64,000 nt of DNA from NCBI RefSeq assembly GCF_001194135.2, contig NC_068984.1, forward strand, positions 133,801,496-133,865,495. Reading direction: 5' to 3'. The notes below the pieces were generated by a model that had not been told where the DNA came from, made no database searches, and saw nothing but the letters and a program-made list of their open reading frames with translations. The DNA comes from Octopus bimaculoides. Taxonomy: Eukaryota. Shown piece after piece: positions 40,148 through 41,666 of the stretch (the stretch's first letter is position 1; every line of letters starts with the position of its first letter). The translations under genes and the position numbers were made by a program.

Positions 40148-41048
40148 CATACANNNNNNNNNNNNNNNNNNNNNNNNNNNNNNNNNNNNNNNNNNNNNNN
40201 NNNNNNNNNNNNNNNNNNNNNNNNNNNNNNNNNNNNNNNNNNNNNNNNNNNNNNNNNNNNNNNNNNNNNNNNNNNNNNNNNNNNNNNNNNNNNNNNNNNN
40301 NNNNNNNNNNNNNNNNNNNNNNNNNNNNNNNATATATATATATATATATATATATACATACACATATATATATATATATATATATACATACATATACATA
40401 TATATATATATATATATGCGCATACATACACACATACATAACTGTTATACATACTAAGTGTGTGTGTGTGTGTATATATATATATATGTATATATGTACG
40501 TATGTATGTATCTATAAGTGTGTGTATGTATATATATACATATATATATGTATGTATGTATATATCAACATTATACCAGTGCATACTCAAGAAAAATAAT
40601 ATAGATTTACAATATGCACATTGATCTACAATGTGAGCTTGGATGATCAAAACACACATAAATTAAAAAGCACATACATATATACACACACCACAACAAC
40701 AAACAAACAACAATAAAATGGACTTATTGTTGTTTTGTGTGTCTCAACTTTTCTTTGGACAAGTTATGAACCATTCTTTAAAGCCATCCCCTATTATGGA
40801 GAATAGATTACCCAGTGAGGACACGGGCCAGCCTCTCTTGATCCCTAAATCAGCCAGTCAGACAATGTCACCAATTCCTTGGTCAGTGTTACGGCTGAAG
40901 AAATCTATCAGAGATGTCCAACAGAAAGCTAAGGACCACGAAGAAGATGATGATGATGATGATGATGATATTGATGACAATGATAACAATGAAACCACTA
41001 ATAAAAACAAAAGTAATAATAATAATGATAATAATAATAATAATAATA

Positions 41049-41088
<40 letters not shown>

Positions 41089-41666
41089 GAATGTTGATGT
41101 TATGAAAGTGTCTAACATAAACAATGGGAGCTTACAGTACAGGGACCAGGTTCAGAGGAACTGCTCCTTCTATAATGAGACCTATACGACGGACCCCTTG
41201 ATAACTGAAATGGAGACATGCCGAATGTGTATCTGTGAAGAAACTGCCATCTCAGATCCTACTTTTATCCCTGTTGTGGCCCCTGTGTCACATGACCTTA
41301 AAGTACCTGATGGGCCGAACGAAGCCAAGGTTCTATCCTATGTAATCCAATGTACGTGGGTGCCCTGCTTGAACTTATCTCTAGCTGTGAACAGTAGCTC
41401 GGAGGTGAACAACACAGAAATATTTTTCATAAGAACTGGCTTCCGTGTTGGTAAGTGTTTGATTGCAGTCGGTGCAGTGATTGCATGTTTGTTAATTGCA
41501 GCGCTTCTCCTGTCTGTGCACCGTTTCTGTCAAAATAGGGCACACTTCCAACTACATTCACAGTATGAAGATGATATGTATTAAACGTCTATGTGATGGG
41601 ACAGATGAATGAAATTAGGGGTTATCTCCTGCAACAGCAATAACAACAATATCAGAGACAGCAACC

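What the first reader, a model, noticed from the sequence alone, without database searches (positions are those of the whole stretch)
40718..41584. Same-strand intronless membrane-protein gene nested in the CRD-splitting intron
Seen: an 867-nt ORF with a signal-like start, sequon-rich ectodomain, a six-Cys motif C..Y/F..(x~18)CxxCxC..(x~38)C....C resembling the first half of a VWC domain with a long insertion, a clear TM with basic residues after it, and a short tail ending YEDDMY. This layout is unlikely to be chance in microsatellite DNA. Established: nested genes are usually antisense to their host, so same-strand nesting is less common. Inference: a lineage-specific receptor or adhesion protein, possibly a retrocopy. 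A phase-1-compatible but weak AAG acceptor at 40762-40763 could also make it an alternative terminal exon of the host.
Basis: partly seen in the sequence, partly recalled or inferred. Interest (0 to 1): 0.75.

Follow-up and report, generated by a model that had tools for sequence, protein, structure and literature searches.

The report
Cephalopod-only membrane-protein gene inside an intron
The 867-base reading frame is a real, transcribed, single-exon gene for a small single-pass membrane glycoprotein whose only detected relative is in a cuttlefish; it sits on the same strand inside a long intron of a Frizzled-domain/LDL-receptor-repeat gene, which makes it a tidy lineage-restricted gene, not a new kind of system.

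Summary
ORF 40718-41584 (+) encodes 288 aa: a hydrophobic N-terminus, an Asp/Asn-rich stretch written by in-frame (GAT)n and (AAT)n microsatellites, six Cys (149, 168, 171, 173, 212, 217), one TM helix (247-269) and a 19-aa tail.

It is a real gene.
- A full HMMER scan of 1.84 billion representative proteins found one true relative, a 335-aa protein from Sepia esculenta RNA-seq.
- That relative shares the six Cys, three N-glycosylation sequons, a near-identical TM and tail, and an uninterrupted ORF.
- RNA contigs of the window's own species match the genome without gaps across the ATG, the proposed AAG acceptor and an internal GGTAAGT. They run at least 600 nt past the stop, probably to about 42928.

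RNA contigs also prove the host splice 21481->53396, so in this scaffold the ORF lies in that 31.9-kb intron on the same strand.

Not supported: VWC membership, use as an alternative terminal exon of the host, and a retrocopy origin (no parent gene found).

Caveats: the 5' end and the strand of the RNA are not mapped. The ORF contig is flanked by N gaps. A neighbouring alternative host exon (<=43962-44912 -> 53396) is expressed at similar depth.

Interest is modest.

The parts
40718..41584 (+). Complete coding sequence, 288 codons plus TAA; ATG in an A(-3)/G(+4) context
   Evidence: orthologous 335-aa ORF in Sepia esculenta RNA contigs
40718..40762 (+). Signal-peptide-like N-terminus (MDLLLFCVSQLFFGQ). 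The cuttlefish protein has an equivalent hydrophobic stretch, LTIAIMTVFMC.
   Evidence: Kyte-Doolittle 11-aa windows of 2.36 and 2.41. No dedicated signal-peptide predictor was available.
40946..41087 (+). In-frame (GAT)n and (AAT)n microsatellites that encode the Asp/Asn-rich low-complexity stretch. The cuttlefish protein has a shorter Asn-rich stretch at the same place.
41162..41368 (+). Six-cysteine ectodomain module, C149 ... C168-R-x-C171-x-C173 ... C212-x-W-x-P-C217, with conserved sequons N153, N219 and N225
   Evidence: invariant columns in alignments A1 and A2
41456..41524 (+). Transmembrane helix (aa 247-269); the N-terminal half, CLIAVxxVIAxLxI, is nearly invariant between the two species
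   Evidence: it is the only confidently modelled element in AlphaFold (pLDDT 82-94)
41525..41581 (+). Cytoplasmic tail (19 aa) with the conserved motif R-F-C-x-x-R-x-H-F-Q-L-x-S-x-x-E-D-(x)-x-Y at the C-terminus
40543..42928 (+). Minimum extent of the unspliced transcript. RNA contigs cover 40543-40975, 41063-41691, 41672-42199 and 42728-42928, and break only at microsatellites or the N gap. There is a dead end at 42928, with GATAAA at 42915.
   Evidence: The strand is inferred from the ORF, not measured.
21233..21481 (+). Host exon encoding the first seven Cys of the Fz (Frizzled) domain; donor G|GTAAGT, phase 1
   Evidence: RNA contigs; Pfam Fz; PDB Frizzled CRDs, best E 7e-8
21482..53395 (+). 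Host intron (31.9 kb, with 7 N runs) that holds the ORF
   Evidence: junction 21481->53396 in X4, X14, X20 and X28
53396..53551 (+). Host exon encoding the rest of the Fz domain
43962..44912 (+). Alternative upstream exon of the host inside the same intron. Its 5' end is not defined (contig break at a (CCAT)n repeat). Donor AAG|GTAAGT is spliced to 53396. A TAA lies directly before the junction in the host frame.
   Evidence: 3093-nt and 2704-nt RNA contigs of X18 and X25; translation

Best explanation
The ORF is the whole coding region of a real single-exon gene. The gene belongs to a small family so far seen only in coleoid cephalopods: the window's species and the cuttlefish Sepia esculenta.

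Shown:
- The ORF is conserved as an uninterrupted frame in both species.
- It is transcribed.
- Its RNA is not spliced within or just upstream of the ORF.
- In this scaffold it lies in a host intron that RNA confirms, on the host's strand.

Inferred:
- The protein enters the ER through its N-terminal hydrophobic segment and ends as a type I membrane glycoprotein.
- Its ectodomain has a flexible acidic/Asn-rich stretch whose length is set by microsatellites, then a small module of six cysteines (presumably three disulfides) carrying three conserved N-glycans.
- A single TM helix follows, then a 19-residue tail with a juxtamembrane Cys (a possible palmitoylation site) and an acidic, Tyr-terminated C-terminus.

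The TM helix and tail are far better conserved than the ectodomain. The most likely mode of action is therefore as an accessory or adaptor subunit that binds a partner membrane protein through its TM helix and juxtamembrane motif, not as a classical ligand-binding receptor. It most likely has its own promoter within about 0.2-0.7 kb upstream of the ATG and its own polyadenylation site(s) between about 42.3 and 42.93 kb.
For: Conservation:
- phmmer of aa 126-288 against 1.84e9 representatives gave one true hit besides self: P0004, E 2e-13.
- BLASTP gives 32% identity over 177 aa, E 1e-21. All six Cys, three sequons and F-x-VGKCLIAV..VIA..LSVHRFC..R.HFQL are conserved.
- In the conserved blocks synonymous sites are saturated (pS 0.88) while pN is 0.28.
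- P0004 comes from more than 40 contigs. Three of its runs are cited in S. esculenta larval transcriptome papers. Ten contigs match each other end to end, with an intact ORF and no Fz exon upstream.

Transcription:
- At least 12 RNA-type runs of organism A hold the ORF words.
- Contigs match the genome without a break over 40543-40975, 41063-41691 and 41672-42199, with no joints or loose ends.
- Depth is 0 in the intron next to the host exon (21486-21560) and at 42930-43075, so the coverage is not general pre-mRNA or DNA background.
- The ORF-to-host-exon depth ratio varies from about 0.04 (X20) to about 1.1 (X14). X40 holds the host exon at 1.00 but the ORF at 0.01, while X29 and X31 hold the ORF but not the host exon.

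Nesting: the junction 21481->53396.
Against:
- The RNA strand is not measured.
- A neighbouring exon (<=43962-44912) that splices into the host has similar depth in the same samples, so a shared transcription unit is not excluded.
- The ORF lies on a 2.1-kb contig between N runs (40154-40331 and 42436-42490), so its position and orientation rest on scaffolding.
- Topology, glycosylation, disulfides and the adaptor role are inferences. AlphaFold gave no ectodomain fold.
- Only two species are sampled.
Confidence: 0.7

Rival explanations
1. The ORF is the 5' cistron of a long alternative first exon of the host locus. Transcription would start upstream of 40543, run through the ORF and the low-complexity region to 44912, and splice to host exon 53396. 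The 288-aa protein would then be translated from an mRNA whose 3' part consists of host exons.
For: - Same strand.
- The exon <=43962-44912 is spliced to 53396, and its own 5' end is hidden by a (CCAT)n contig break and the N gap at 43110-43894.
- Depths track each other. X4: 11.7-16.6 (ORF), 13.7 (3' region), 15.2 (alternative exon). X25: 9.7, 9.1, 11.7-24.7. X28: 6.3 (3' region), 2.7-4.1 (alternative exon). The canonical host exon does not track them: 30.6 in X4, 7.2 in X14 (same sample as X25), 113 in X28.
Against: - Depth is 0 at 42930-43075 in all four runs that express both flanks, and the X25 contig dead-ends at 42928 with no loose end.
- There are no strong GT donors in 42200-42928 (sequence).
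- Polyadenylation hexamers lie at 42317, 42340, 42354 and 42915.
Confidence: 0.15
2. The ORF is an alternative terminal exon of the host, entered from donor 21481 through the AAG acceptor at 40762/40763. This would fuse a truncated Fz domain to residues 16-288.
For: The phase is compatible (sequence). Host and ORF are co-expressed in several runs.
Against: - RNA contigs of X4, X14, X25 and X26 run unbroken through 40762/3 and the ATG, with 80-175 nt of upstream sequence.
- Contigs through donor 21481 continue only into 53396, with no branch, even in X14 where ORF depth is at least host depth.
- The cuttlefish orthologue keeps its own Met and hydrophobic N-terminus.
- The fusion would leave 7 of the 10 Fz cysteines.
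Confidence: 0.03
3. The gene arose as a retrocopy of a multi-exon parent that inserted into the intron.
For: The coding region has no introns in either species. An A27 tract lies at 43079-43105.
Against: No paralogue or parent was detectable among 1.84e9 representatives. The A tract lies 150 nt beyond the apparent RNA end, in a genome full of simple repeats. If this happened, it predates the split between the two species.
Confidence: 0.1
4. The nesting is a scaffolding artefact: the 2.1-kb ORF contig belongs elsewhere, or in the other orientation.
For: The contig 40332-42435 is bounded by N runs on both sides, and there are 13 N runs in the window.
Against: The gaps are short (178 and 55 N). 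RNA depth continues at a similar level on the next contig, 42728-42928. Expression co-varies with the alternative host exon 2.4 kb further on, and that exon is tied to the host by splicing.
Confidence: 0.1
5. It is a chance ORF in a non-coding intronic transcript.
For: About 45-50 codons come from in-frame trinucleotide repeats. There is no Pfam family.
Against: The open frame exceeds every simulated one. The orthologous intact ORF keeps the Cys, sequons and TM despite saturated synonymous sites.
Confidence: 0.02

Closest known systems
Von Willebrand factor type C / chordin-like cysteine-rich domain (Pfam PF00093)
   Same: A Cys, about 18 residues, then a C-x-x-C-x-C motif, and later a C-x4-C pair. 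This resembles C1-C6 of a VWC domain.
   Different: There is no second half (no CC-x-x-C). The spacer between C-x-C and the next Cys is 38 residues here and 66 in the cuttlefish, against fewer than 10 in VWC (my recollection). No Pfam hit at E<=10 and no match to any PDB chain at E<=10.
Small single-pass adaptor or auxiliary-subunit proteins with a Cys-rich ectodomain, such as the Shisa/Shisa-like family (analogy recalled from memory)
   Same: Signal peptide, short Cys-rich ectodomain, one TM helix, and a cytoplasmic tail with short linear motifs. Conservation is concentrated in and near the membrane.
   Different: The cysteine pattern is different. The tail is only 19 aa with no PY motifs. 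There is no Pfam Shisa hit. This is a functional analogy only.
Nested intronic genes of animals (one gene wholly inside an intron of another)
   Same: The ORF lies wholly inside a host intron confirmed by RNA. It is single-exon, as are about 41% of human nested genes (PMC3192792).
   Different: It is on the host's strand, as are about 37% of human nested genes, so this is not exceptional. A second internal transcription start for the host itself lies close by.
Host gene: Fz-domain plus LDL-receptor class A repeat proteins (an architecture seen in corin-type proteases and MFRP; from memory)
   Same: The host has an Fz domain (47.7 bits) followed by two LDLa exons (49.5 and 51.6 bits).
   Different: The rest of the host lies outside the window, so its identity as corin-like is not established.

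Membership tests
VWC domain (PF00093) | Significant match to the family profile | tested here: not met
   Pfam scan at E<=10 lists no VWC. The orthologue profile hits no PDB chain at E<=10.
VWC domain (PF00093) | Ten-Cys pattern with C-x-x-C-x-C and a C-terminal C-C-x-x-C | tested here: not met
   C-x-x-C-x-C is present (C168, C171, C173). Only six ectodomain Cys exist, with no CC-x-x-C, and the C173-C212 spacer is variable.
Type I single-pass membrane glycoprotein | N-terminal signal-like hydrophobic segment | tested here: inconclusive
   11-aa hydropathy maxima of 2.36 and 2.41 in both orthologues. No signal-peptide predictor was available.
Type I single-pass membrane glycoprotein | One C-terminal TM helix with N-glycosylation sequons on its N-terminal side | tested here: met
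   Hydropathy 247-269. The helix is modelled at pLDDT 82-94. Sequons N153, N219 and N225 are conserved.
Nested intronic gene | Lies wholly within an intron of a host gene that is actually spliced | tested here: met
   RNA junction 21481->53396 in four runs. This holds only if the scaffold is correct (N runs).
Nested intronic gene | Own transcription unit, not joined to host exons | tested here: inconclusive
   No joints across 40543-42199 and a dead end at 42928. The 5' end is not mapped, and the neighbouring alternative host exon has similar depth.
Retrocopy / retrogene | Intron-free copy of a multi-exon parental gene | tested here: not met
   It is intron-free, but no paralogue was found in 1.84e9 representatives.
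Retrocopy / retrogene | Poly(A) remnant and target-site duplications at the ends | tested here: inconclusive
   The A27 tract at 43079-43105 is 150 nt beyond the RNA end. Target-site duplications cannot be searched for in microsatellite DNA with gaps.
Taxonomically restricted (orphan) gene family | No detectable homologue outside one clade | tested here: met
   The only true hit is the cuttlefish protein. Word-index searches found nothing else. There is no Pfam family. The limit is single-sequence HMMER sensitivity.

The most novel reading that the evidence does not exclude
The protein founds a coleoid-specific family of membrane-embedded auxiliary subunits, with a new six-cysteine fold. It would act through its near-invariant TM helix and RFC..R.HFQL..ED.Y tail on a channel or receptor. 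It would be co-regulated with an internal promoter of the Fz/LDLa host gene, so the intron would house a small regulatory and coding module that arose with the cephalopod genome reorganisation.
Probability: 0.2. Interest if true: 0.6.

Novelty: new member of a known kind. Interest (0 to 1): 0.38.

Why it matters
It adds a well-supported example of a lineage-restricted cephalopod gene: expressed, conserved over a deep split, with an unknown fold and an unusually conserved membrane anchor. It is a reasonable candidate for work on cephalopod-specific membrane biology.

It also shows that this host intron is not inert. It carries a protein-coding gene and an alternative host exon or promoter. Annotation pipelines that merge or drop same-strand nested genes could get this wrong.

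It does not change any general principle.

Tried and rejected
- Word-index protein searches returned only the window's own protein plus a low-complexity hit (P0002). They missed P0004, so they say little.
- P0003 (a coiled-coil tandem repeat with 22 weak stretches) and P0005 are spurious.
- AlphaFold2 on the two-sequence alignment gave mean pLDDT 51.6, with only the TM helix confident. No fold search was run, because it would be meaningless.
- Exact-product look-ups of the full ORF and of three sub-ORFs (starts at 41057, 41060, 41102) found nothing.
I selected ORF segments by script instead.
So the 5' end, bridging of the N gaps by DNA contigs, and substitutions in the related 'organism B' could not be examined.
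- Polymorphism among the cuttlefish contigs is uninformative, because they were selected for an identical product.
- The internal GGTAAGT at 41449 was rejected as a donor. The contigs run through it, and in the cuttlefish the same codons read GGC AAA.
- Rfam gave no match in 38000-46000.
- blastn of the cuttlefish locus against 38-46 kb matched only the TM/tail coding part.

Full report
**1. What is in the sequence**

The ORF stands exactly as described: 40718-41584 on the + strand, ATG to TAA, 288 codons.

The translation has these features (unless noted):
- A hydrophobic N-terminus, MDLLLFCVSQLFFGQ.
- An acidic and then Asn-rich stretch.
- Six ectodomain cysteines at 149, 168, 171, 173, 212 and 217.
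- Eleven N-x-S/T sequons.
- One strongly hydrophobic segment at 247-269.
- A 19-residue tail that begins HRFCQNRAH and ends YEDDMY.

Residues of roughly 77-123 are written by in-frame (GAT)n (40946-40977) and (AAT)n (40999-41087) microsatellites. Part of the frame's length, and several of the sequons, are therefore by-products of repeats.

Even so, the 305-codon stop-to-stop frame is longer than any frame in 60 second-order Markov simulations of the window (mean 169 codons, maximum 246).

The window is a draft scaffold with 13 N runs. The ORF lies on a 2.1-kb contig bounded by N runs at 40154-40331 and 42436-42490.

**2. It is a conserved protein-coding gene**

Pfam finds no family; the only hits are low-complexity noise below every cut-off.

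I scanned residues 126-288 with phmmer against 1.84 billion representative proteins. Apart from the protein itself there was one real relative, P0004 (335 aa, E 2e-13). The other two hits, a coiled-coil repeat protein and a Pro/Ser-rich repeat protein, are spurious.

P0004 is assembled in more than 40 contigs of many runs. Three of those runs (SRR19578107, SRR20545811, SRR23936175) are cited in transcriptome papers on larvae of the golden cuttlefish Sepia esculenta, for example PMC10466719.

The two proteins share the whole layout:
- a hydrophobic N-terminus;
- an Asn-rich stretch, short in the cuttlefish and expanded by the microsatellite here;
- the six cysteines in the same order: C...NE[ST]...C-R-x-C-x-C-[DE]-E ... 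C-x-W-[IV]-P-C-[IL]-N;
- three sequons at identical columns (N153, N219, N225);
- a nearly identical membrane anchor and tail, F-[RK]-VGKCLIAV-xx-VIA-x-L-x-I-xxxx-LSVHRFC-xx-R-x-HFQL-x-S-xx-ED-(x)-x-Y.

In the conserved blocks synonymous sites are saturated (pS 0.88) while pN is 0.28. The blocks were chosen because they are conserved, so this is only a qualitative sign of purifying selection. The stronger argument is that an intact frame with the same architecture survives in both lineages. At the DNA level only the TM/tail coding part is still alignable, and the flanks are not.

The window's protein already exists as a singleton entry in UniRef. The gene model is therefore not new, but it is unnamed.

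**3. Transcript structure**

At least twelve RNA-type runs of the window's species ('organism A') hold the ORF's 31-mers. Runs of a second species ('organism B') hold 17-29% of them.

When RNA contigs are laid on the window, they match the genome without a break and stop only at microsatellites:

| Stretch covered | Runs |
|---|---|
| 40543/40553-40975 | X14, X25, X4 |
| 40637-40969 | X26 |
| 41063-41691 | X4 |
| 41092 to about 41692 | X14 |
| 41248-41638 | X20 |
| about 41672 to 42104-42199 | X4, X18, X25, X28 |
| 42728-42928 | X25 |

The microsatellite breaks are expected for a k=31 assembly. Four points follow.

- **No splicing into the ORF.** There is no joint or loose end at the proposed AAG acceptor (40762/3), at the ATG, or at the internal GGTAAGT (41449). 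In the cuttlefish those codons read GGC AAA, so the donor-like string is a coincidence of Gly-Lys codons.
- **The ORF needs its own ATG.** An in-frame TAA at 40664-40666 closes the frame upstream.
- **The RNA probably ends near 42928.** The X25 contig dead-ends there, and depth is 0 at 42930-43075 in all four runs. Polyadenylation-type hexamers lie at 42317, 42340, 42354 and 42915.
- **The coverage is specific.** The intron next to the host exon (21486-21560) has depth 0 even where the exon has depth about 110.

The only variant seen in the ORF is A>G at 41551 in X14, which is synonymous (Q278).

Ten cuttlefish contigs likewise match each other end to end. The ORF is intact and no coding exon lies upstream. 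Six of them start 250-490 nt before the ATG.

Three things are not established:
- The 5' end.
- The RNA strand. Contigs carry no direction, and only three read pairs were found in the raw-read run X37.
- Continuity across the N runs.

**4. The host and the nesting**

RNA contigs of X4, X14, X20 and X28 define a host exon at 21233-21481. They continue after 21481 with ACATAAAAAGAAATTGCAAAGAG..., which is the window sequence from 53396. Before 21233 they carry the end of the open frame 16027-16776, so that upstream exon ends at 16738|GTATGT.

The two joined exons give a Pfam Fz domain (47.7 bits against a cut-off of 32.1) and match solved Frizzled cysteine-rich domains (best E 7e-8). Two LDL-receptor class A exons follow at about 56.2 and 58.5 kb.

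The intron 21482-53395 is therefore real, it splits the Fz domain, and in this scaffold it contains the ORF on the same strand.

Expression of the ORF and of the canonical host exon is uncoupled:
- The depth ratio of ORF to host exon is about 0.45 in X4, about 1.1 in X14 and about 0.04 in X20.
- X40 holds the host exon completely but only 1% of the ORF words. X29 and X31 hold part of the ORF and none of the host exon.
- In X14, where ORF depth is at least host depth, the contig still passes the 21481 donor without a branch. The ORF RNA therefore does not come from that donor.

**5. An unexpected neighbour**

The same intron holds another exon, <=43962-44912, with donor AAG|GTAAGT. In contigs of X18 (3093 nt) and X25 (2704 nt) it is spliced to 53396.

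In the host frame a TAA lies directly before this junction. This isoform therefore cannot extend the host protein upstream.

In the sample sequenced as X14, X18 and X25 this exon is about three times deeper than the canonical exon (22.8 against 7.2). Across samples its depth follows the ORF's depth within about 2.5-fold.

Two readings fit this:
- two neighbouring internal promoters that are co-regulated; or
- one long transcription unit in which the ORF is the 5' cistron.

The zero depth at 42930-43075 and the dead-end contig at 42928 favour two units. The N run at 43110-43894 hides the critical stretch, so I keep the second reading as the main rival (0.15).

**6. How it probably works**

This section is inference. 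The conserved sequons lie on the N-terminal side of the only TM helix and there is an N-terminal hydrophobic segment. Together these point to a type I membrane glycoprotein.

- The ectodomain is mostly low-complexity plus a small six-Cys module.
- AlphaFold on the two-sequence alignment modelled only the TM helix with confidence.
- No solved structure matches by sequence.

Conservation is highest in the N-terminal half of the TM helix, the juxtamembrane H-R-F-C, the H-F-Q-L motif and the acidic Tyr-terminated end. That pattern is typical of small accessory subunits that bind a partner inside the membrane and are sorted or anchored by short tail motifs. I therefore favour an adaptor or auxiliary-subunit role over a ligand-binding receptor or adhesion role. 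Nothing here tests that.

**7. Comparison with known families**

- **VWC domain.** The resemblance is limited to a Cys followed about 18 residues later by C-x-x-C-x-C and a later C-x4-C. The second half is absent, the spacer varies between the species (38 vs 66 residues), and neither the Pfam profile nor any PDB chain matches. It should not be filed as VWC or SVWC.
- **Retrocopy.** This cannot be supported. No parent was found, and both orthologues lack introns.
- **Same-strand nesting.** This is not rare. [quoted passage not shown]

**8. Verdict**

This is a real, expressed gene restricted to coleoids as far as can be seen. It encodes a small type I membrane glycoprotein of unknown fold from a single exon, nested on the same strand in the Fz-domain-splitting intron of an Fz/LDLa gene.

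Its main inference is partly supported, and its alternative (a terminal exon of the host) is not supported.

Confidence in the main reading is 0.7. Interest is modest (0.38): this is a good annotation and a candidate for follow-up, not a new kind of system.

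Noticed in passing
window 43962-44912 (+), joined to 53396: An alternative upstream exon of the host inside the same intron, with donor AAG|GTAAGT. Contigs of X18 and X25 splice it to the second Fz exon. A TAA sits directly before the junction in the host frame, so this isoform can encode at best an N-terminally truncated host protein. In one sample it is about 3x deeper than the canonical exon.
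   Followed up: partly
window 16027-16738 (+): A long Ser/Thr/Asn-rich open frame with no Pfam hit is a host exon. Its end (…GAGCAAACCC|GTATGT at 16738) is joined to 21233 in RNA contigs. It is probably a mucin-like stalk before the Fz domain.
   Followed up: partly
window 21150-21204: A short segment just upstream of the host exon is matched by many unrelated high-depth RNA contigs (depth up to about 200) that diverge on both sides. It behaves like a fragment of an expressed repeat family.
   Followed up: no
window 26623-26865 (+) and 55466-55909 (-): Relics of mobile elements in the host introns: a weak GIY-YIG nuclease match (E 6e-4, below the cut-off) and a Tc3-type transposase HTH (38.9 bits, above the cut-off).
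   Followed up: partly
window 45140-45440: Inverted-repeat ends (GGGGTTTTCAAACT ... AGTTTGAAAACCCC) around an AT-rich core. It looks like a miniature inverted-repeat element just after the alternative exon.
   Followed up: no
window 23-325, 46051-46420, 53858-53980 and others: A peptide-like motif (…AETLA..AKCLA.F..L.SEFKF.RGRLC.SSF.G…) recurs in several + strand frames across the window. This points to a dispersed SINE-like repeat family.
   Followed up: no
window 40154-40331, 42436-42490, 43110-43894: The ORF contig and its neighbours are separated by N runs, so the local order and orientation depend on scaffolding.
   Followed up: no
window 40548-40643: Six upstream ATGs (uORFs of 1-22 codons) lie in the part of the leader covered by the longer RNA contigs. 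One contig (X26) starts at 40637, downstream of five of the six, which hints at a start site close to the ATG.
   Followed up: no
L001 2821-2835 (Sepia esculenta contig): One cuttlefish contig splits the ORF into 151-aa and 195-aa products (P0016, P0014), consistent with a one-base length change in a T6 run. This is most likely an assembly or sequencing indel, not a variant of the gene.
   Followed up: partly
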